This document shows positions 9,336-36,227 of a stretch of 64,000 bases of DNA, piece by piece (position 1 is the first letter of the stretch; every line of letters starts with the position of its first letter). The notes beneath the pieces were generated by a model, which searched no databases, had not been told where the DNA came from, and worked only from the letters and a program-made list of their open reading frames with translations. The DNA comes from Magallana gigas (lineage: Eukaryota). The translations under genes and the position numbers were made by a program. The stretch is taken from the NCBI RefSeq assembly GCF_963853765.1, contig NC_088859.1:48546001-48610000 (forward strand). Direction: 5' to 3'.

Positions 9336-12300
9336 ACAATCCCCCCCCTTCCCCCCCCCCCCCCAAATACTGTGGCTGTTGTACCACGTACCAAAAATAT
9401 AGATAACATTGTGCAATATGTTGTGAATGTACATTTTATGAATATAGTAGATGATTCCAGAGGCTTATAACATTAACTCTTGGTTGCCATGCTTAGGCTT
9501 CGGTTTTCTTCCAGGTAGAATGATAATGGAGGCATGATTCTGTTTCATTGTCTGATGTCAGAATGTTTATTTATAATTGTAATGGTTTTGGTTCCACTGC
9601 TAATAAACAAAGAGATTAGTTAAGCTGTTGTTATCTTGCAGTGATATTAATACCCCTGGAATAGATTTCTTTCATTCTGATAAAATCTCATTTTGTCATT
9701 ATGGCAGTACCAGTAACAAAAAAGTAATGAAACGCAAAGGGCCAAAATTGTGTGTTGTCAGTGGGGTGTCCAATGTCCAATTCTAGTTTACGCATTTGAT
9801 GTTAAAACCTAATTCAAACAAACGTGAATGATGATTTTCACAAAGTTTGAGCGCACTTGTTCTGAAGAAGAAGAAACACAATGTAATAAAAAAGTGATCG
9901 AACATGCAGACGGACGCCGGACAAATTCGGCTCCTGAAGGTGAGCTTAAACGGATGTAATCCCATAAAAATGACAATGTGGACAATGTAATATCAAAATG
10001 CTGTAAAAATATGACATGTAAATGGAGAGAGTCTGTATTATATCATAGAGCAGTTTAAGGAACAGTCATAAAAATTGTAACTTGCAATTGTCCCTTGCAG
10101 AAAGCGCTTATGTTTTGCTCCAATCAAATTAAACTGCGACTTCTTTTATTAATTTAATACTTAGACTTAAGTGCGATTTGGCCCGTGTCCTTAAATGTAA
10201 ACAATTCGATCAACGAGGAAGTTTGATAGTAATTTGTATCGCATTAAGGAGAGGACTCAACCCGGAAGTTAGAGAAGTGTTTTATTTAAGCACGACCAGT
10301 CTAAACTTCACACGGAATTCATTTAAGTTCGGAGGAATAATTCCAAAAACGTAGTAAGTCACTAGGCGCATGCTGATAAAGTAATTATCCATGTGTGGGT
10401 TTGCTATAAAGTTTTACGTATGAAGGTGCCCCTTCCTCTTTTTCATACAGTTGGTTTTTGTCAATCCATTTTGCTTTGGAGTCTCTATAAAAGTGTTAAT
10501 TCACTATGTTTTGTAGTATCTCAAAAATCCTTAATTTACTATGCTTTCGGGTATCTAAGAAACCGTACAAACCTCGCGAAATATTTTTTCGATCGCGAAT
10601 ATGATATTTTCATCATGTAGATATTTTTAGATCATTTTGTTCGAGTGTAATCTCTGCATGTGAGTCCTATGCCAGAAGAGAATATGAAATAAACAGGAAA
10701 ATATATTTCTCAAATATTTAAACTACCGGCAGTCATATGGTTCTGTTTACAAAAGGACATTTTATTTTTGGTAAGGGTTGTTTTCATTTGCATTCTTTGT
10801 CTTCTTTTTATCAATTTACTGTTGTGAAGATGTCATTTTAAAAAGTTGATGACCATTTGTGTTTCCATTATACATCATATGGCATGGGCACTTCACTCTT
10901 TACTTCATTGCCTTGTTACTCCAAATCAGACCATTGATCCTTATAGGAAAAACACTATAGTGCAAGACCTGGTGACCTAAGTATAAATTCTGCGGAAAAT
11001 TGTTACAAAAAAACCCCGAACTATACTTCTTAAAAAAATTATACTTCAGAGTCGTTTTAATTCATCTTAATTGGTAGTGTTAGCTGTTCACGGATCGCCA
11101 AACTGACACTGCTGTGGGGTTATTTTTGTAGGTAATACACAACAATTGCCAAATATACCCAATAGCAAGCTGCTTATTTTTCATATAGTTAGCCATTCAG
11201 AAACTTGAGGCGTCCCACAATCACAACAGTTCCCAACAGGAAGGACGCAATTCTTATTATATAGGTAAAAAAAACTGAATGTGTTTATGCGGCTTCTTAA
11301 ATTTCGTTCACCAGAGAGGCTAATTGAGTTTTTCTGTTCACCCTTTGTTTGCAAATCAAAGATGACCACACAATCTATAGCCATCTCACTTGTTTCCGTA
11401 TCGCCTTCGGTATCACACATCTTCCATCGTCCGTACGTCCGCCTGTTAACTGTTAACACGACTTCATCTCTGGATTTCCTGAGCCCGATTCTACCTATCT
11501 TGGCACAAAGAACATTGGTTGAAGGTGATGCTAACTGATAAAATAACGGAACACGCCTTTCTAAAAAATAAATGATAAAAAAAAAACAACGTAAATAGGG
11601 TTGGTTTTTCTCAAGAATCTCTGCAACAACTAGAAATGCTAATATATTCAGCATATAGTGAACATTTGTATGTTCCAAGTCGTTTAAATGGCGCCTCCAC
11701 CCCTCCCAAACAATATGAGCTTGAAGTAGTGCAAATTTTGTAGGAATATTATTATATATAAAATATAGTTTAAATTCTCTTCTAAAGATCTACAATGCTA
11801 CCATTTATTTTATCAATGTACTAGCATACTGATATAGTGTAGATTCTTAACCGTTATCTTCGACTAATATATCTAATCGGGCTCTATGAGAGCTGCAAAG
11901 TTCTACTAGAATAAGATTTCTTTCCTTTTTTTAATTTACTTCTCAAGAACTACAATGATATAATTTTTGTAATTTATGATACTGTTATAAACGCATAAAG
12001 TTATATTTTTTTCATTAACTTTATTGCATATCCTTGATTGATCAAAACCCCCCATTTTCCGAATATGGAAAAACATGCAGATCTCTTCCCTTCTTATCGA
12101 CTGCATGCCTGGGAACCCTAATGATGATTACATGGGGGGGGGGGGGGGGGGGCTGGTTTTAATCTGAATCTAAATTTGTTTTATCTTGGTACAATCATCC
12201 TCATATGCATTTATTTATCGATTCTCTTCTTTAAAGAATGCAGTCTCATGCTTCTGTGCTTAGAGTCATGGCCGGATTAAAATAAAAGCAACCCCCCCCC

Positions 12301-13064
12301 CCCCAAAAAAAAAAGACAACACCCAGAGATCTTTGAATCATGTGAGCTTTGTTGCCCGTGAGCCCCCTGTTATAACCTATAAAATACAAATCTGCAGTCC
12401 ATCATGAACTTCAGATACTGGGTAGAAATATATGGGCCTAAATCTGTCGATTTATTTATTCGTTGATCTTTTCTTTGTCATGATTTTAATTTTAAAAAAC
12501 CCAGCTATTTGTAATACACGTTATTTTTTTTTTCTTCATTTGAAATCAAAAACATTCAAGGTTGTTTTATACAGCTGTAATCAATTCAAATCAATTATTT
12601 GATAAAAACCACATGTGGCGCAAGTCAAATGTACAGTATACAAATAAAGTAAGTACATAGATTTTTTTTATGTGAAATGATTTAAAGGATAAAGCTCCAT
12701 AGATCTATAGAAATTTCATGATATAGAGGTGGAACATCAGATAGCTAGGTTTGTTTGAAATGAAATGTATTTCAGTATTATGGAGGGTTGACATAAAAAA
12801 AAGTCTAAAAGTGTCCTTTGTTATCTTTTCGTGATAAACACTGATAAAGCCATGGAAAAAATGTTTAATTTAAGTGAAATATTAATTTAAATATACTCAG
12901 ATACTATACTTTCACGTGTGCGTATTAACTGAAGCTATAAACAGTATCCTTTAATTAGGTAATTAAGATTATTATTTTTCCACGTCATGAAACTTTGAAA
13001 CCATCCGTCAAGTCAAGAGATGTCGATATACCTAATTTGCATCAATCTATTTTTGGAAACATAG

Positions 13065-28360: not shown

Positions 28361-29722
28361 ATGCCTACATTCTGGTTAATCATTGAACAGTGTTGATCTG
28401 GTGTGTTCTGATGTAAAGATATTACTTTATGTTGTTGTTTTCGGAAACAGTGATTTTTTTAATTTTTTGCACACGACCTTTTTCTGGTCTGGTGATATAA
28501 TCATATAGTGTAGTGATATATTGTGTTTTTAGTGATTCAAGATTGCAATTCTAGTATGTTGTTTTGAATTTAGTTACAGTAATTTATCGCTTTATGCTAT
28601 GCTACGTTGTATAGTTTAGAATTTTAGAAACATAATTTATTACGATTTATTGCAATTTGTTAGCGAATTCTGTTGTGTTGATTCGTTTTACTCATGTTAT
28701 AGTTGTATCCTGGTAGGGTGATTTATTGCATCATCTGTTGCACCGTTTATTTACCTAGATGGTTTATTATGCGATCTTTGACACGGCTTATATTATATGC
28801 AGTAAAGATACGACTTTGTTATACCTACAAAACCAACACCTGAATTTTAAATAAGTTTTTAAACTTTAATTCATGATTGATCTACGACTTCCTATTAAAA
28901 TGACGTTTTTTAGTGAACATGTAAGCAACTGACAACCTCTTTTAGTGGAAACAGCCGCCTTGTAAATTTTATATATGCCAGCAGTTTGAAATACCAATAT
29001 CATCATTGGACCTTGTGTTTGCAGTTTTTTTTTAATTGGGAACCCTTCTACCCTAAAATGTTCTGTAGACTTTACTTATTCATTCTTCATATTATATCTT
29101 AAAATCACAAGGCCCTGATATATTTATTTTTGGATAATGCACTAATTTCGGGAAATAACTAAAGCGGTAGAGACCCCAGAATATCTTTATTTTCACCACT
29201 GCAAGTAACTAATGAGCAGATCTTTTAGTCCTTGGACTGCCCACATATTTATCTGACTATACCTGACTCAAATAATAAACCTTTTCTTTGATTTCCTTTT
29301 ATAATTCATTCATAAAACCCAGAACCTTCGCCCTCAGGGTTCTTAACAGGGCTTTGCCTTGGACCCACTCTGTCTCAAACGGCCATGGCCTCCCTTTTAT
29401 TCTAGAGCACCCACTTTTCTGTATGCATTGCAAAATCAACTGATCAAATTTTAACAACGATGCAGTGAGAATAATTTATGCTAGAATTAAATACTAATCA
29501 AACATTCATTATTTTTATTTGACATTTCAACAGAAAGCTAGACAAAAGTTACAGACGTTTACTTTCGTCACATTGTCATCACTACAACGTGATGTCATTT
29601 TGAAAAACTATTGAATAATTTTTCAGGATCGATGGATTTTCTCTGGTTTTGTTTTTCCTTGAAAAAAAGGAATCGCTGTTCTTCCATGAAATTATCAAGG
29701 TTGTCACATTAAATTCAAACCT

Positions 29723-30655
29723 TCAAGTCACTAGAAGCCCATATTCCTTGAGATAGTGTTTGATCCGCGCCTCTCGCTCTAAGCGACTTGGGTGAATCTG
29801 TTTCGGTGGAACATGCAAAGCTTCAATTTTCTCTACTACACTTGACACATCTTTGTATTTGTTTGAAACGTAAACAGGACAGAGAAGTTTTTCGAGGCGG
29901 TTGTATCTTGGGTCAGAGGTTAATGGTGGCAGACGATTCCCAGGGTAAATAGAGGTGGATTTCATTTTGGACCAAGGAATCAAGGAAGGCATCGGTAAAC
30001 TTTTTGACTTGGATCTCTCGCGATGAATACTCGGAAGCCGATCCAGTGTTGGAGTCCTACTAATCTTTCGAGTGGTTTCACGGGTCTGTTCTCGACTGAT
30101 ATTCAGCTCCGTCTGGAAAACACTGGTGAACTGAACCATCTTTCCCCGCGAAGAAGGTTGACCAGAATTCTCTTTTGGCAACTTTTCGTCTTCAGTTTCA
30201 TCGCCAAATTTCGATACTAGAGTTTCTATTCGATCTCGATCTTCCTTGGTTTCTGCTTTGGATGTTTGACCAAACGCAGTGAATTCATTCCTGGAAGAGT
30301 CTTCCCGCGTGAGGAGTGCGCGGTCAGTCACTGTCCAACCACGTGACACTGAGTTTCTGTCTGCCAGTCTCCGGCGTATTGCGCTGGACTTTCGTTTCTG
30401 GTTTTCAATAAATACGGCCCGTTCGTTATCATACCTTGATATGTAAGTCATTCTCTTCCTACCCAAGTCATACAGCGAATCTTCCAATTTCCTTTCTTCT
30501 ACGAAGTATCTTGGTGGAAGCCCCGGAAGTCGGGTGTTGCTGACGTTGTAGAGGTTTCCGCCATGCATCCATTCTTGGATTTTGATAGCCTTCTTCTTCC
30601 TTCGGACAACGGCATTATTTATCCGCTCCCTGCGCCTTCGCTCTTCTCCTTTCAT
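29723..30655 (-). CDS. Uncharacterised basic protein, 310 aa, single coding exon (paralogue A)
   Basis: 933-bp ORF that is GC-richer than its AT-rich flanks, with blockwise protein similarity to the ORF at 35331-36227. Confidence 0.8.
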   Translation of the reverse strand: MKGEERRRRERINNAVVRRKKKAIKIQEWMHGGNLYNVSNTRLPGLPPRYFVEERKLEDSLYDLGRKRMTYISRYDNERAVFIENQKRKSSAIRRRLADRNSVSRGWTVTDRALLTREDSSRNEFTAFGQTSKAETKEDRDRIETLVSKFGDETEDEKLPKENSGQPSSRGKMVQFTSVFQTELNISREQTRETTRKISRTPTLDRLPSIHRERSKSKSLPMPSLIPWSKMKSTSIYPGNRLPPLTSDPRYNRLEKLLCPVYVSNKYKDVSSVVEKIEALHVPPKQIHPSRLEREARIKHYLKEYGLLVT

Positions 30656-31844
30656 TAATGATGACTTGGTTAATTCTTCGAGTTTCAGGCTACATGTTGC
30701 TACTTTGGTGTTGGGAACAACTTAGCATAAAGTGTTGACGTTATAAAATTCAATGCATACAGAAGGGCAATTTAATTGTTTTGTGCTCTATGCAGAAGCT
30801 ACATCAGATATGTCCTATTCAATGAGGACATATCAAGCGTGTTAAAGACACGTCGATCATCACTTCACGACATAGAAACGACTGCAACAATTGGACACCA
30901 GATCAAGTGATTGCATTTATAGGCGAAGACAGGACCGGGATAGTTGTGTATTGAAACCTTATCGGAATACTGCCTTAGTCTGATAGTGTTGCTCAATGTC
31001 CGATGTGTTTCTGAATCATTGTATGCATGCACCTTTACACGGATGATTTTTATGGTTATTGTAAATACCAAAACCCAAGTAAACGTTTTTCAGAATCGGA
31101 TTTCCGGACAATCCCTTGAAACCATCATTTTGTTGAGAAAAGGTTCAATAATGTCAGTCGATCTTGTTTATAAAGGAAACAGCTAGCAATATGTGAGATA
31201 GAATGCAGTACCAGTAAAACGAATTCAAAGTTTGGAAATGTGTATCAACATTTCCCAAAACGGTAAAATCTTGTAAAAATAGGGGGGGGGGGTAAATATT
31301 TTTAAGAAGCCTCGCTAGACTCGAAAAATAGTCTGTACCAGATTATCAAATGCCAATGTAAATTTTATGTATTCAACAGTACTGTCAACTCAACAGTACA
31401 ATGTAATTGGTTTAATGATATATGCTTTGCAAAAGTAAATGGTGTACATTCAAGTAAAAAACCGGAAAGGTAACAATCACATGACAGTTTTGAGGAGTTC
31501 TGATTGGCTTGCGTGTCAATTACAAGTCTTTTTAAAACTGTCTCGTGAGATAAAATGATTATATTTAGAGTTATATTATCGGATTTTAAATAACTCATTT
31601 ATATATTATCACAGATGTGCAGACAGAGAGTATTAAGTTATCTATCTGATCTTTTAAATGGTGATTTCAAATCGCACTGTTTAGGATACTGCTGGTTCTA
31701 CGCGAGATACGAGGCAGATATACCCTGTTCAAAACTTCACGGACAAGACATGAAACAAATCGAACACGACCGAAGAACTCTGGAAGATTTAACACGATCC
31801 AAACAAAGAAAAATGTATCTATATGTCTATACTCATAAACAAGG

Positions 31845-31876
<32 letters not shown>

Positions 31877-34386
31877 CCATCCTTATTGGATGTGTATACT
31901 GAGTAAAACGCTGTATTTTTACAGACAGGCGTTGGAAAATACTCAAATACTCGAAATTGTTTATTTCGTGAGTAATGAATTATAAGAATAGAAAAATAGG
32001 TTTGTCATTGGGGGGGGGGGGGGGGGGATGTTTCAAATATTAATGTAAATTAACCGCCCGCTATTTACATAACATAACATAACAATTAAATTTCTTTGAT
32101 TAAGTTTATATGTGTCCAATAAACATACATTATTTATTGATAAAATGACAAAGAATGCAGATAATAGTTAATGTATTTAAGCGTAGTACATTTTATGTAT
32201 GACAGCCTTAATTATGAAACGTGTTCGGGTCATAAAAAACAACCAGTAGTTTTGACGGGGTCATTTGATATTTTACACACAATAAGGTATAAAATCTACA
32301 TACATTGTACAGGTAGCGTAACACTTCATGTCAGCACAAAGCTGATCACCAAATGCCTCCAGTTCAACCCGTTCAATTTATATAAGAATTGACCGCTTTC
32401 AATAAAGCGTCAAAGAAGCCTATTGCTATGATTCAGATATGGTAGTATACAATCCCCAAATAAAAAATGATATTAAATCATCATAACATAACGCAAATGT
32501 GCAGATGTAAGATTTCCATCCATAATATGTGGGATTAATATATGAAATAATACTCTTTTTGTTGGAAAGTCGCTTCAAGTTTGTTTTTATCCAAATCGTT
32601 TCGAGTTTAAAAAAATGAGAAAAACATCAGCGAAGCTCACTCTATATAAATTGCCTTTAAAGCTAAAACTACAGATTTTTTTAAGGTTTTGGTACGTATA
32701 CCCGAGTGTCTATATATGTTTAAAGTAAAGCCAATAAAACCCGATATTTCACTATTCTGTTGAGGATTATGTTTTTAAAAATAAATGTTAGTATTTTTGT
32801 ATTTCATCAGTATTTTTGCCCTTCTTGTTCGTTCACCTTCAAATGAGTTCAATATTATAAACAGCCTGGAAGAGAACACAGAAACATGAGGCCAAACTTT
32901 CAGAATCTAATTTGAAAAAATGTCGGCATACTTTCAAACAATCAATATAATATTTCCTTAGAAATGTTTTAAAACATGATTTACATAATACAATAAAAGT
33001 TGCGTATGGTCTGGTTACCACCGTATACATTTCATTTAGTTATGATTTTCCCTCAGGAAAGAATTTTGTAAGATTTTAAGCAGAACCTAACTAGAAGTCT
33101 TTGGATGATGTTATATATCGTGGTCAGCTTCCAAAGTGTAATTTCAGCGAGAGATTAATAATGCAACGCTGCTTTATATGTGGCACTAGCTACATTAATG
33201 CTGTAATGCTCGTGTATTATACATAAGCATGCCCTCAAATTGCCCGTGGTAACCGATTGCTTAACGTTTGTAATCCACTGCAACGGTAAAGAATAGGTAA
33301 TGTTGTTTGAACTGTTCGCGGTTGGTCAGTCTTAAAACTTTAAATGTTACCAAAATAGCGGATAATTCATTTAACTGTCAATCAAACGTTTTCCCGTAAA
33401 TATGTTATTTATTGGTTTTGGCGACCTTTTTTTGGTTGATGATTTGGCAGATCCTGGCTCTGTGAGACAACACAAGGAACCGGACACCGTCGCAATTCAT
33501 TGGCACTGATAGAAACGCAGTATCCGGCGCCCTGTATTTAAACAATTAGACCAGACAGCAGGGATCGATCAGAGGATAATTCATTCTGAGGACGGCAATG
33601 GGAATTCAAATGAAGCGGAAAAAACAACATTCATGTTTGTATTTCTAGATCTAAGAAGAATAAAAAACCCTTCCATCTTGCGTACCTTTGTTAACCAACA
33701 TTTGAGGTCCAAGAATGAGAGTCCAGCTGCATAGTATGACTAAGGAACATACGTATATAATTCTTTCAGGCTGTAGAGAATTTCTGATTTGTTTTACTTT
33801 CTTTTACTTTATGAATTTGTTTTACTCACTGTTTTCCACGACATACAAATTTAATAATATTTACAACCATTACTCCCTACATTATTAAGGAGTAATGATA
33901 ATGGAACCAGCTATATGTAACTGCTTGATTTGATATTTTTCGTACATTTACAAAAAATGGTTGAAAGGAAAAGTACACAAACAAAGCATTGTAACGCCTA
34001 ATTCTAAACATCAATAAAAACATTATGTTTACACCTTTTGAGTATGTTATCCCCCATCAAAGAAATTCGATTGCATTCATACAGCTAACTGACACAAGCG
34101 ATATTCACTGAATATAAAGACACTCCGTGTACTTTTCAGAACTGCCCCCAAACACATTATATTAATCAACGTTCAGTTTTTTTAAATGATAGCACTTATT
34201 ATTCTATTACCTACACTTAGTAATTAATAGTGTATCATCTTATACTTTTGTGGTTGACTAAAGATGCTGGATTATTTTAAGATGTATCAACACAGCTACA
34301 TTGAGGACAAGTAATGGCGTCGAACTCCGAATATGGAGGAGTTTAATTTTTTTAAGTGCAACTTACTGATTGACAGTTACTTTGAT

Positions 34387-34524
34387 NNNNNNNNNNNNNN
34401 NNNNNNNNNNNNNNNNNNNNNNNNNNNNNNNNNNNNNNNNNNNNNNNNNNNNNNNNNNNNNNNNNNNNNNNNNNNNNNNNNNNNNNNNNNNNNNNNNNNN
34501 NNNNNNNNNNNNNNNNNNNNNNNN
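34387..34524. other. Assembly gap (138 N)
   Basis: Run of N. Confidence 1.
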
Positions 34525-35330
34525 ACAATTCATTGTTTGCTTTATTCTGTTTCTCTTTTGTAAATCCAGCTTTTCTTATACTTTTGTATATAATTCTTCT
34601 GCACCTCATGTAACATTATATGAGTGAAAAAAAAATGAACTTGAACTTGGTGGTCGTTTCATAGGACCATTCCAGAAATTGAATTGTCTGTTATTTTTCA
34701 TAAACGCTCGAAAATAGAATACCACAGGAACCATTAAAATCAATATAGAAAGCATTCACCAAATAATGATAATTTAAAACAACTAATTAGAAGATAACAA
34801 CAGAATGTAATCAATAATTTGAACAAATGCAACTTCAAATCAAATGTAACATTTACACTGTATATGATTCAAATAAATTGTCATTTTTTAAATGCAACAG
34901 TTTTGTGGAAACTCATTGGTGGTATTGTGATATTTAATAATATTGATGAATAATTTTAATGTACAAAGTTAGTTGTGACGCGCACCAACTCATTAATTCA
35001 TTTTAATCATCAAATCAAGTATTGAACAAAAAATGAGTTAAAATATCAGTGATTTCAAATTTAAAATATTTCTTGGAAATCCATAGGCAATAACTAAATT
35101 ACTTATTTCTCCACATTTATGATAGATCTACCATCAATAATTCAGGTTCATAATAATTTGGTCCTTAATAAATTTGAAAATCAAACTAAAGGAAAGGATA
35201 AGTAATTGGCAATAAAAATCAATAACATCCTTAGATTAACGCATGAATTTACCAAGAAAATCCGTCAGTTCGAGGACAACTCCTTGAAATGCAACACGCG
35301 TGAACGAGATAATTCCTGGGGTATCTATGT

Positions 35331-36227
35331 TCAGTCCTTCGCCCAGCTGATTCCAACTTCTTTCATAAAGGCGTAGATTTTCTCTTCCCACTTGGGTTTG
35401 GCTTCTTTGGCACTTTTGGAGGGTTTGTGGAGGGACTCTATTGTGTCCACTATATTTGTCACGCTTGTTTTGATTCTTTTGTCGTACGTGGAGGACAAAG
35501 CTTTCTCTAGCAAAGCGTAACGAGGGTCGCCAGCCACACTGGGACATTTCCCGCCAAATTTACTGAGTCTATTCCGGCGCGCCCTCTGGGCTTCCTCGTC
35601 CCGCTTGAAGGAGGAGACTGAGCTGTACACACTGGAGGCGGTGGTGTTCTCACGGCTCAGCCCGGGCCGAGCGGGCTCACTGACCACGGTCCGACTGTCC
35701 CTGGGGCGGAGCTTGTTGTGAAGGGGCTGAGGGGTGAACTGGACTGTCTTTGCTCGCTGAGGCTGGGGTGCCCGGTGATGGGGCTGGTTGGACTGTACGA
35801 ACTCCTTGGGACTTTTAAATTCGGTTTTCCGGGACACCACGCTCGCGGCGTCACTGCGTTCGTTTCCCGAATGGCGGGAAGAGGTTGTACTGGGTCTCCC
35901 GTAGCTCATGATGGGCTCGCTCATCGTGGAGTAAGATCGCACGTTTTTAGCGCTCACTTCTTTGCGCTTTCTGTTCTCCAGAAACTTCTGTTTCTCGTGA
36001 CTAAATTGTGAGAGGAACTTGTAGCGTTCGACACCAAGATCTATCAGCCTGGCCTTCAGCATCCGGACCTCTGTCACTGTGTCGTCATTTTTTCCTGACA
36101 TCCGGGTATTTCCCTGGTTGAGGTCTAATGTTAAGTCCTTTGTCATCCATTCCTCGATGTCTTTCATGGTGTGTTTTTTCTTCGCCTTCAATCTCGAAGA
36201 TGAACTAGCAGGTTTCGGTGGATGCAT
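35331..36227 (-). CDS. Uncharacterised basic protein, 298 aa, single coding exon (paralogue B)
   Basis: GC-rich ORF. First ATG at 36227, with an in-frame TGA upstream at 36248-36246 and a likely splice acceptor at 36251-36250. Similar to the ORF at 29723-30655. Confidence 0.82.
   Translation of the reverse strand: MHPPKPASSSSRLKAKKKHTMKDIEEWMTKDLTLDLNQGNTRMSGKNDDTVTEVRMLKARLIDLGVERYKFLSQFSHEKQKFLENRKRKEVSAKNVRSYSTMSEPIMSYGRPSTTSSRHSGNERSDAASVVSRKTEFKSPKEFVQSNQPHHRAPQPQRAKTVQFTPQPLHNKLRPRDSRTVVSEPARPGLSRENTTASSVYSSVSSFKRDEEAQRARRNRLSKFGGKCPSVAGDPRYALLEKALSSTYDKRIKTSVTNIVDTIESLHKPSKSAKEAKPKWEEKIYAFMKEVGISWAKD

What the first reader, a model, noticed from the sequence alone, without database searches (positions are those of the whole stretch)
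29723..36227. Tandem pair of divergent orphan basic proteins sharing a PP1-docking-like KxVQF motif and a DPRY-LEKxL domain
Seen in sequence: two same-strand single-exon ORFs 4.7 kb apart align in blocks. N-terminal KKKAIKIQEWMHGGNLYNVSNTRLPG matches KKKHTMKDIEEWMTKDLTLDLNQGNTRMSG. LYDLGRKRMTYISRYDNERAVFIENQKRK matches LIDLGVERYKFLSQFSHEKQKFLENRKRK. C-terminal SDPRYNRLEKLL...IEALHVP...RIKHYLKEYGL matches GDPRYALLEKAL...IESLHKP...KIYAFMKEVGI. In the otherwise unalignable middle, both keep KMVQF (30128-30142) and KTVQF (35736-35750). Established: [RK]-x-V-x-F is the RVxF docking motif for protein phosphatase 1. Inference: an old duplicated family of PP1-targeting proteins that I cannot assign to any named family.
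Basis: partly seen in the sequence, partly recalled or inferred. Interest (0 to 1): 0.75.

Follow-up and report, generated by a model that had tools for sequence, protein, structure and literature searches.

The report
Oyster gene pair with PP1-docking-like motif
Two neighbouring intronless oyster genes are real, ancient duplicates from an unnamed family of mostly disordered basic proteins found in molluscs and at least a sea urchin. A short, strictly conserved motif suggests, but does not prove, that the bivalve and many gastropod members dock protein phosphatase 1.

Summary
Two minus-strand ORFs, A (29723-30655, 310 aa) and B (35331-36227, 298 aa), are paralogues (27% identity, E 8e-16). KMVQF and KTVQF sit at the stated coordinates. 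The assembly gap (34387-34524) lies between the genes, outside both ORFs and outside B's transcript.

The proteins are not orphans. A profile search finds 117 cluster representatives, in oysters, pearl oyster, scallop, several gastropods and a sea urchin. All named ones are "uncharacterized". None matches Pfam or a PDB sequence.

The B-then-A tandem order also occurs in Pinctada and Pecten, so the duplication predates the split of those bivalve lineages. B is transcribed unspliced from the minus strand.

AlphaFold2 gives protein A two long N-terminal helices, a disordered middle and short C-terminal helices around DPRY..LE. RxKxVQF is an island of conservation in the disordered part. 16 of its 18 natural variants fit the strict PP1 RVxF consensus.

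The motif is absent in heterobranch snails and sea urchin, so it is not family-wide. A PP1-peptide complex prediction gave only weak support (0.58 against a best control of 0.01). My verdict is a plausible new RVxF-type PP1 partner, unproven and of moderate interest.

The parts
29723..30655 (-). Gene A coding sequence (310 aa plus stop), the fast-evolving paralogue (clade A)
   Evidence: ORF. Orthologues at 83, 79, 47 and 39% identity. Colinear Logan contig L001 = window 29250-31228. RNA runs hold 57-70% of that stretch.
30356..30652 (-). A residues 2-100: two long helices (2-31 and 49-100), a conserved N-terminal module with IxEW, a TEER.L-type helix and a QKRK basic patch
   Evidence: AlphaFold2 with the 67-sequence alignment gives pLDDT 90-97 here. 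Invariant and near-invariant columns. Only generic long-helix matches in PDB, Z about 6.2.
30128..30142 (-). A KMVQF (residues 172-176), an RVxF-type motif in the disordered middle
   Evidence: pLDDT is about 50 in the blocks around it and falls below 50 in nearby segments. The column is invariant across 11 orthologues.
30107..30124 (-). A SVFQTE (residues 178-183): second, older conserved island of the type [VIL]-F-x-T-E-P
   Evidence: Alignment block. It is kept out to the sea-urchin group, where KxVQF is absent.
29726..29923 (-). A residues 245-310: C-terminal module with DPRY..LE..L (29891-29914), LH.PP and short helices 249-258, 270-276 and 291-304
   Evidence: D248, R250, L254, L258 and L280 are 90% or more conserved or invariant over 67 sequences.
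35331..36227 (-). Gene B coding sequence (298 aa plus stop), the slower-evolving paralogue (clade B)
   Evidence: ORF. Orthologues include Saccostrea echinata LOC133204411 (81%) and Pinctada imbricata FSP39_009511 (51%).
34856..36561 (-). Gene B transcript, unspliced, about 1.6-1.7 kb (5' UTR about 330 nt, 3' UTR about 420-475 nt)
   Evidence: RNA run X13 gives a 1726-nt contig at 34856-36561 and X1 a 1559-nt contig at 34912-36470, both colinear. Stranded polyA reads of X21 have the first mate on + only, opposite to the spliced + strand neighbour. The flank 36525-38100 is nearly silent.
35736..35750 (-). B KTVQF (residues 160-164), an RVxF-type motif in the poorly conserved middle that aligns with A's disordered stretch
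   Evidence: In the 26-row bivalve clade the top-residue shares are R 0.88, K 0.92, V 0.96 and F 0.88, against a mean of 0.27 for the disordered region.
35673..35690 (-). B TVVSEP (residues 180-185): counterpart of the [VIL]-F-x-T-E-P island
35505..35528 (-). B DPRYALLE (residues 234-241), core of the C-terminal module
34387..34524 (.). Assembly gap in the spacer between the two genes. It is not part of either gene.

Best explanation
A and B are two real, separately transcribed, intronless genes. They come from a tandem duplication that predates the split of oysters, pearl oysters and scallops. They belong to an unnamed family of basic (pI about 10), largely disordered proteins of about 300 aa. 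Protein A has three parts: an N-terminal pair of long helices, a disordered S/T/P/R-rich middle, and a short helical C-terminal module centred on DPRY..LE..L. B shares the conserved end blocks and the poorly conserved middle. In bivalves and in vetigastropod and caenogastropod snails, the disordered middle carries a strictly conserved short linear motif, R-x-K-x-V-Q-F. I think the most likely mechanism is that this motif inserts its V and F into the RVxF groove of the PP1 catalytic subunit. On that reading these proteins act as PP1 regulatory or targeting subunits, and the helical ends set where or on what the phosphatase acts. Shown: paralogy, family range, synteny, transcription of B, disorder around the motif in A, motif conservation and its substitution pattern. 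Inferred: PP1 binding, and the targeting role of the helical ends.
For: Paralogy is E 8e-16. The family has 117 representatives at E<=1e-3 and 87 at E<=1e-10. Named members are Saccostrea, Pinctada, Pecten, Haliotis, Nucella, Lymnaea, Aplysia, Biomphalaria, Physella and Strongylocentrotus. This genome holds only these two copies. The B-then-A order on one strand recurs in Pinctada (L089), Pecten (L090) and an ENA contig. B is transcribed, unspliced, from the minus strand. The motif lies in a stretch with pLDDT of about 50 or less, between confident helices. It is a conservation island: 0.88-0.96 against 0.27 for the disordered region in the bivalve clade. Both paralogues kept it in every lineage examined since the duplication: KMVQF, KSVQF and KMVSF in clade A, and KTVQF and KTVSF in clade B. 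Of 57 full-length representatives, 30 have [KR]x[VI]{P}[FW] 55-125 aa upstream of DPRY, against 2.7% of shuffled windows. 16 of 18 distinct natural variants fit the strict 5-mer [HKR][ACHKMNQRSTV]V[CHKNQRST][FW], against 22% of chance matches. So the tolerated substitutions follow the published RVxF pattern. The consensus definitions are as quoted in PMC4794898. Complex prediction of PP1 residues 1-300 with B 135-200 scored ipSAE 0.58, 0.58 and 0.44, against a best control of 0.01.
Against: No binding has been measured. The complex prediction is only 'weak support': partner pLDDT was 40-42, the runs agree in at least 46% of contacts, and no interface was reported. In the tool's calibration, only 5 of the 78 solved complexes scored 0.60 or under, and all 4 mismatched pairs that passed did (they scored 0.34-0.59); the tool says such a pass is more often wrong than right unless the guess was likely beforehand. 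A pass may also reflect memory of solved RVxF-PP1 complexes. The PP1 used was a metatranscriptome surrogate. It is 100% identical to the oyster PP1 exon tested, but it is not the oyster protein itself. The loose RVxF pattern occurs in about 30% of shuffles of these proteins, and the strict 5-mer in 3.5-4.5%. The extended 6-mer with two basic residues is not met, and there is no SILK or MyPhoNE motif. The motif is missing in heterobranch gastropods and the sea-urchin group, while the helical ends and the F-x-T-E-P island persist. The family's core function therefore does not require it. There is no similarity to any named PP1 regulator family.
Confidence: 0.48

Rival explanations
1. The R-x-K-x-V-Q-F island is a functional short linear motif, but its partner is not PP1. 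It could be another protein bound by strand addition, or a self-contact with the helical ends. The family would then have a PP1-independent role. The language-model look-alikes hint weakly at testis or cilia-type disordered proteins.
For: The family's oldest conserved parts (N-terminal helices, F-x-T-E-P, DPRY..LE) persist where the motif is absent. The Atlas feature search for both A and the urchin member returned CIMIP4/TEX33, and for A also CFAP77 and C10orf120, at 0.77-0.80. The complex score is only weak. There are no accessory PP1 motifs.
Against: The substitution pattern follows the strict RVxF consensus (16 of 18 variants against 22% by chance). V and F never vary within the 32 motif-bearing sequences. 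The Atlas scores are at noise level by the tool's own calibration. None of the 67 aligned members matched any Pfam family beyond scattered single weak hits, and none of those was TEX33 or CFAP77. The profile had no PDB sequence hit even at E 10, although sperm and cilia doublet structures are in the PDB. AlphaFold2 predicts no intramolecular packing of the motif.
Confidence: 0.35
2. The proteins bind PP1, but as regulated inhibitors or substrates of the inhibitor-1/DARPP-32 type rather than as targeting subunits. RVxF would dock the protein, and a nearby basophilic phospho-site would then occupy or modulate the active site.
For: The proteins are largely disordered. B has a conserved R-P-R-D-S-R-T stretch 10-16 residues after the motif, in oysters and Pinctada. 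The RVxF evidence is the same as for the main explanation.
Against: This is pure inference. There is no sequence similarity to inhibitor-1/DARPP-32 or any other Pfam inhibitor family. The putative phospho-site is not conserved in clade A. The large conserved helical ends are more typical of a targeting or scaffold role.
Confidence: 0.12
3. The ORFs are not functional genes. They would be chance ORFs, pseudogenes or parts of a mobile element.
For: Both are intronless and lack any known domain.
Against: Full-length open frames are conserved in at least two phyla. The genome holds only two copies. Tandem synteny is conserved in Pinctada and Pecten. B gives a stranded, unspliced polyA transcript with silent flanks. 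RNA runs hold A.
Confidence: 0.01

Closest known systems
RVxF-type PP1-interacting proteins (PIPs), the general class of disordered PP1 regulatory or targeting subunits such as spinophilin, PNUTS, NIPP1, Repo-Man and inhibitor-1
   Same: A 5-residue K-x-V-x-F motif fits the loose consensus [RK]x0-1[VI]{P}[FW] as quoted in PMC4794898. It also fits the strict 5-mer and Hendrickx-type patterns that I wrote into the regex check, the Hendrickx pattern from memory. The motif lies in a disordered stretch, is conserved while its surroundings drift, and sits between other modules that could provide targeting.
   Different: There is no sequence or Pfam relationship to any named PIP. There is no SILK or MyPhoNE motif and no two-basic-residue prefix. 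The motif is absent from part of the family. Binding is untested.
Uncharacterized orthologues: Saccostrea echinata LOC133204411, Pinctada imbricata FSP39_009511, Pecten maximus LOC117328787, Haliotis rufescens LOC124132621, Nucella lapillus ACOMHN_063600, Aplysia californica LOC101864130, Strongylocentrotus purpuratus LOC100889927 and LOC115923525
   Same: Same family by profile search, with full-length matches. Same three-part layout and the DPRY..LE module.
   Different: None has a name, a function or any mention in the papers searched. The heterobranch and sea-urchin members lack the KxVxF motif.
CIMIP4/TEX33, CFAP77 and C10orf120 (chordate testis or cilia disordered proteins)
   Same: They are the nearest named clusters by protein-language-model features, for both A and the urchin member. 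They are of similar size and character.
   Different: Scores of 0.77-0.80 are at the tool's noise level. None of the 67 aligned members matched these Pfam families. No solved ciliary protein matches the profile. This is a lead only.

Membership tests
RVxF-type PP1-interacting proteins | A motif fitting the RVxF consensus | tested here: met
   KMVQF and KTVQF fit the loose consensus, the strict 5-mer and the Hendrickx-type pattern. Consensus definitions as quoted in PMC4794898, except the Hendrickx pattern, which I gave from memory.
RVxF-type PP1-interacting proteins | Extended high-specificity 6-mer [KR][KR][ACHKMNQRSTV]V[CHKNQRST][FW] | tested here: not met
   The residue before K is G in A and A in B. 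A conserved R sits two residues before K instead.
RVxF-type PP1-interacting proteins | Motif lies in an accessible, disordered region | tested here: met
   The AlphaFold2 model of A has pLDDT of about 46-51 over residues 101-220, which include the motif at 172-176. B itself was not folded; its motif lies in the poorly conserved middle that aligns with that stretch.
RVxF-type PP1-interacting proteins | Motif conserved among orthologues, with substitutions that PP1 tolerates | tested here: inconclusive
   Met in bivalves, Haliotis and Nucella: 30 of 57 representatives carry it, and 16 of 18 variants fit the strict pattern. The island scores 0.88-0.96. It is absent in heterobranch gastropods and the sea-urchin group.
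RVxF-type PP1-interacting proteins | Physical, V/F-dependent binding to the PP1 catalytic subunit | not testable with these tools
   The only proxy is an in-silico one: ipSAE 0.58, 0.58 and 0.44 against a best control of 0.01, verdict 'weak support', partner pLDDT 40-42, runs agreeing in at least 46% of contacts, no interface reported.
Named PP1 regulator families in Pfam (from memory, e.g. PPP1R32, PPP1R35_C, PPP1R36, inhibitor-1/DARPP-32, inhibitor-2) | Match to the family's Pfam model | tested here: not met
   No Pfam family at E<=1 for A or B. Among the 67 members, the only hits at E<=0.1 are scattered single ones to unrelated families.
   117 representatives of 50%-identity clusters at E<=1e-3, including gastropods and Strongylocentrotus purpuratus.
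CIMIP4/TEX33 (PF15400) | Match to PF15400, or to solved ciliary inner proteins | tested here: not met
   No Pfam hit. No PDB sequence hit even at E 10. There is only a noise-level feature similarity.

The most novel reading that the evidence does not exclude
This is an ancient, intronless bilaterian protein family with no name. Either a PP1-docking RVxF motif arose in the disordered linker by the time of the last common ancestor of bivalves and gastropods, or other lineages lost it. Both tandem paralogues have kept it since before the oyster-scallop split, and heterobranch snails then lost it. If so, A and B would be previously unknown, mollusc-type PP1 regulatory subunits. The family would also be a natural experiment in the gain and loss of a phosphatase-docking motif on a constant scaffold.
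Probability: 0.4. Interest if true: 0.5.

Novelty: new member of a known kind. Interest (0 to 1): 0.38.

Why it matters
PP1 gets its specificity from several hundred mostly disordered partners, almost all of them defined in vertebrates, yeast and flies. Mollusc-specific partners are essentially unknown. This finding offers a well-defined candidate: two expressed genes, a clear motif, natural motif-less relatives as controls, and cheap decisive binding assays. It also gives a layout and a taxonomic range to a family that currently carries only "uncharacterized" labels and has no Pfam entry. If PP1 binding fails, what remains is an ordinary conserved family of unknown function.

Tried and rejected
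- **Pfam:** scans of A, B and 67 family members found nothing meaningful.
- **PDB by sequence:** the family profile had no hit at E<=1 or at E<=10.
- **Foldseek against AlphaFold DB clusters:** only TM<0.2 noise.
- **VIA-align against 48,161 PDB chains:** only generic long-helix or coiled-coil matches to residues 45-105, Z about 6.2, below the tool's threshold for helical models.
- **ESM Atlas feature searches (three):** all scores at or below about 0.81, which is noise level. CIMIP4/TEX33 recurs but has no other support.
- **Third word-indexed protein search, with the alignment:** it returned only known members because of the candidate cap.
- **Literature:** the motif string KTVQF appears only in unrelated SARS-CoV-2 epitope papers. 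The orthologues' LOC identifiers appear in no paper.
- **Intronless PP1 gene in this genome for the complex test:** none found. PP1 matches exon by exon, with open frames of 48-72 aa. I therefore used an unaltered metatranscriptome PP1 ORF, identical over the oyster exon.
- **Within-species differences in the CDS:** A has 4 synonymous and 1 non-synonymous difference; B has 3 and 2. That is too few for a dN/dS statement.
- **Other motifs:** SILK, MyPhoNE and Fxx[RK]x[RK] are absent from A and B. I checked LC8 TQT-type and PP2A-B56 LxxIxE readings of the conserved islands by eye only and rejected them as not fitting.
- **Chance ORF, pseudogene or mobile element:** rejected.
- **Careful ML tree:** it did not finish in the time allowed. 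The quick IQ-TREE tree was used instead.
Full report
**1. What is in the sequence**

The region holds two minus-strand ORFs. A runs 29723-30655 (310 aa). B runs 35331-36227 (298 aa from its ATG). KMVQF is A residues 172-176 (30128-30142). KTVQF is B residues 160-164 (35736-35750). Both proteins are basic, with pI 10.16 and 10.14.

The assembly gap at 34387-34524 lies in the spacer between the genes. It is outside both ORFs and beyond the 3' end of B's transcript, so no frame depends on it. Only the 4.7 kb spacing is uncertain. I left the gap unread. Reads were laid from 34525 onward, and the loose-end letters the tool printed at that edge were not used.

**2. Are these real genes?**

Yes. In RNA run X13 a 1726-nt contig covers 34856-36561. 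In X1 a 1559-nt contig covers 34912-36470. Both are colinear with the genome, at depths of 35.6 and 60.8, while the flank 36525-38100 is nearly silent.

In the stranded polyA run X21, all reads over B have the first mate on the + strand. That is the opposite of the spliced + strand neighbour gene (GT..AG joints at 38692/39143 and 39194/39896). B is therefore transcribed from the minus strand as an unspliced mRNA of about 1.6-1.7 kb that stops before the gap.

For A, a 1979-nt Logan contig is colinear with 29250-31228. Fourteen small RNA-type runs, one of them recorded as RNA, hold 57-70% of that stretch, whereas genome-sized runs hold 90-99%. This fits a transcript of about 1.2-1.4 kb. A's ends were not mapped.

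The genome (564 Mb, 29 contigs) holds only these two copies.

**3. Not orphans**

Word-indexed searches found close orthologues: A at 83, 79, 47 and 39% identity; B at 82-83%, 81% (Saccostrea echinata LOC133204411), 51% (Pinctada imbricata FSP39_009511) and 47%. The host is therefore an oyster.

A profile of 11 orthologues (alignment A1) was searched against 1.84 billion representatives. It found 117 proteins at E<=1e-3, 87 at E<=1e-10 and 22 at E<=1e-30.

Named members are:
- Pecten maximus LOC117328787
- Haliotis cracherodii and H. rufescens
- Lymnaea stagnalis
- Aplysia californica LOC101864130
- Biomphalaria pfeifferi
- Physella acuta
- Nucella lapillus
- Strongylocentrotus purpuratus LOC100889927 and LOC115923525

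. Every name is "uncharacterized" or "hypothetical".

None of 67 aligned members (alignment A2) has a meaningful Pfam match. The profile hits no PDB sequence even at E 10. No paper in the library mentions the orthologues' identifiers.

Most members were recovered as single uninterrupted ORFs on genomic contigs. This suggests, as an inference, that the coding sequence is intronless across the family.

**4. Age of the pair**

A quick maximum-likelihood tree, midpoint-rooted, gives:
- a mollusc clade of 42 rows (SH-aLRT support 99);
- inside it a gastropod group and a bivalve clade of 26 rows (support 91);
- the bivalve clade splits into clade A (8 rows, support 100, long stem of 1.04) and clade B (16 rows, support 93), with two further rows (P0030, P0072) grouped beside clade A.

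Synteny agrees with the tree. On one strand, B is followed by A in three other places:
- in Pinctada imbricata (L089: B at 10001-10936, A at 11847-12788, 313 aa, motif KSVQF);
- in Pecten maximus (L090: B at 10001-10915, an A-type ORF at 17509-18339 with KMVSF, plus an extra N-terminal fragment copy);
- on an unnamed ENA contig.

The duplication therefore predates the split of oysters, pearl oysters and scallops. From general knowledge, not tested here, that split is several hundred million years old. The two genes have stayed adjacent in the same order since.

**5. Layout of the proteins**

AlphaFold2 on protein A with the 67-sequence alignment (mean pLDDT 68.6, pTM 0.38) gives:
- two long helices, residues 2-31 and 49-100, at pLDDT 90-97;
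- a disordered stretch, about residues 105-245, at pLDDT about 46-58;
- short helices at 249-258 (the DPRY..LE..L segment), 270-276 and 291-304.

Structure searches return only generic long-helix matches.

Across all 67 sequences, the conserved parts are the N-terminal helices (IxEW, a TEER.L helix, a QKRK patch), the C-terminal DPRY..LE..L / LH.PP module, and a small island of the type [VIL]-F-x-T-E-P in the linker. These occur even in the sea-urchin group.

**6. The KxVQF motif**

Within the disordered middle, R-x-K-x-V-Q-F stands out. In the 26-row bivalve clade the most common residue accounts for 0.88 (R), 0.92 (K), 0.96 (V) and 0.88 (F) of rows. The mean for the disordered region is 0.27. 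V and F are invariant across the 32 motif-bearing sequences.

Both paralogues have kept the motif in every bivalve examined.

Of 57 full-length representatives, 30 carry [KR]x[VI]{P}[FW] 55-125 residues upstream of DPRY. Only 2.7% of shuffled windows do. Of the 18 distinct natural variants, 16 fit the strict 5-mer [HKR][ACHKMNQRSTV]V[CHKNQRST][FW], against 22% of chance matches. The two misfits lie in the non-mollusc clade and overlap the other island.

The consensus definitions are as quoted in PMC4794898. That paper also notes that the loose pattern occurs by chance in about 25% of proteins. My shuffles of A and B give about 30% for the loose pattern and 3.5-4.5% for the strict 5-mer. So a single match means little. 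The evidence lies in the conservation and in the pattern of tolerated substitutions.

Against the PP1 reading:
- the extended 6-mer with two basic residues is not met;
- SILK and MyPhoNE are absent;
- the motif is missing in Lymnaea, Aplysia, Biomphalaria, Physella and the sea-urchin group.

**7. In-silico binding test**

The genome has no intronless PP1 gene. I therefore took an unaltered 327-aa PP1 ORF from a metatranscriptome contig (L020:125-1105). It is identical to the oyster PP1 exon over 78 residues.

PP1 residues 1-300 with B residues 135-200 scored ipSAE 0.58, 0.58 and 0.44, against a best control of 0.01. The tool's verdict is "weak support". Its caveats are:
- partner pLDDT was 40-42, and the runs agree in at least 46% of contacts;
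- no interface or contacts were reported;
- the mark was reached by 51 of 78 solved complexes and 2 of 108 mismatched pairs;
- only 5 of the 78 solved complexes scored 0.60 or under, and all 4 mismatches that passed did (0.34-0.59);
- a pass may be memory of solved RVxF-PP1 complexes.

I treat this as a small upward nudge only.

**8. Conclusion**

The "orphan" label is wrong. The PP1 reading is plausible but unproven, and it can apply only to the motif-bearing part of the family.

My best explanation, at about 0.48, is that A and B are RVxF-type PP1 partners: the disordered linker docks PP1, and the conserved helical ends provide targeting. The main rival, at about 0.35, is that the motif serves another partner and the family's role is unrelated to PP1. 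An inhibitor-1-like mode is a minor variant. Non-functional ORFs are excluded.

In kind, this would be a new member of the known class of disordered PP1-interacting proteins, so interest is moderate.

Noticed in passing
window 38296-40524 and beyond, + strand: A spliced, well-expressed gene lies upstream of B on the opposite strand. Its exons are about 38296-38692, 39143-39194 and 39896 to at least 40524. RNA reads and contigs in all four runs support GT..AG joints at 38692/39143 and 39194/39896. I did not identify its product.
   Followed up: no
L090 18700-19044 (Pecten maximus LR736838.1): Just downstream of the scallop A-type gene there is a second, partial copy that encodes only the N-terminal 70-80 residues of the A-type protein. 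The ORF is 114 aa and ends early. It looks like a fragmentary extra duplication.
   Followed up: partly
window 34525-34622 and 34914: Reads and contigs break with loose ends right beside the assembly gap (34527-34622), which suggests repeated or divergent sequence there. One RNA contig carries a 19-nt insertion after 34914 in B's 3' UTR, probably an allele. I did not use the loose-end letters.
   Followed up: no
alignment A2; window 30107-30124 (A) and 35673-35690 (B): A second short island, [VIL]-F-x-T-E-P, lies about 2-20 residues after the KxVQF position. It is older than KxVQF and is present in the sea-urchin group and other non-mollusc members. I know of no matching short linear motif.
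   Followed up: partly
window 39366-39397: Several RNA reads and contigs end here with unlike sequence on one side, inside the neighbour gene's second intron (table 7). This may be a repeat or an alternative exon.
   Followed up: no
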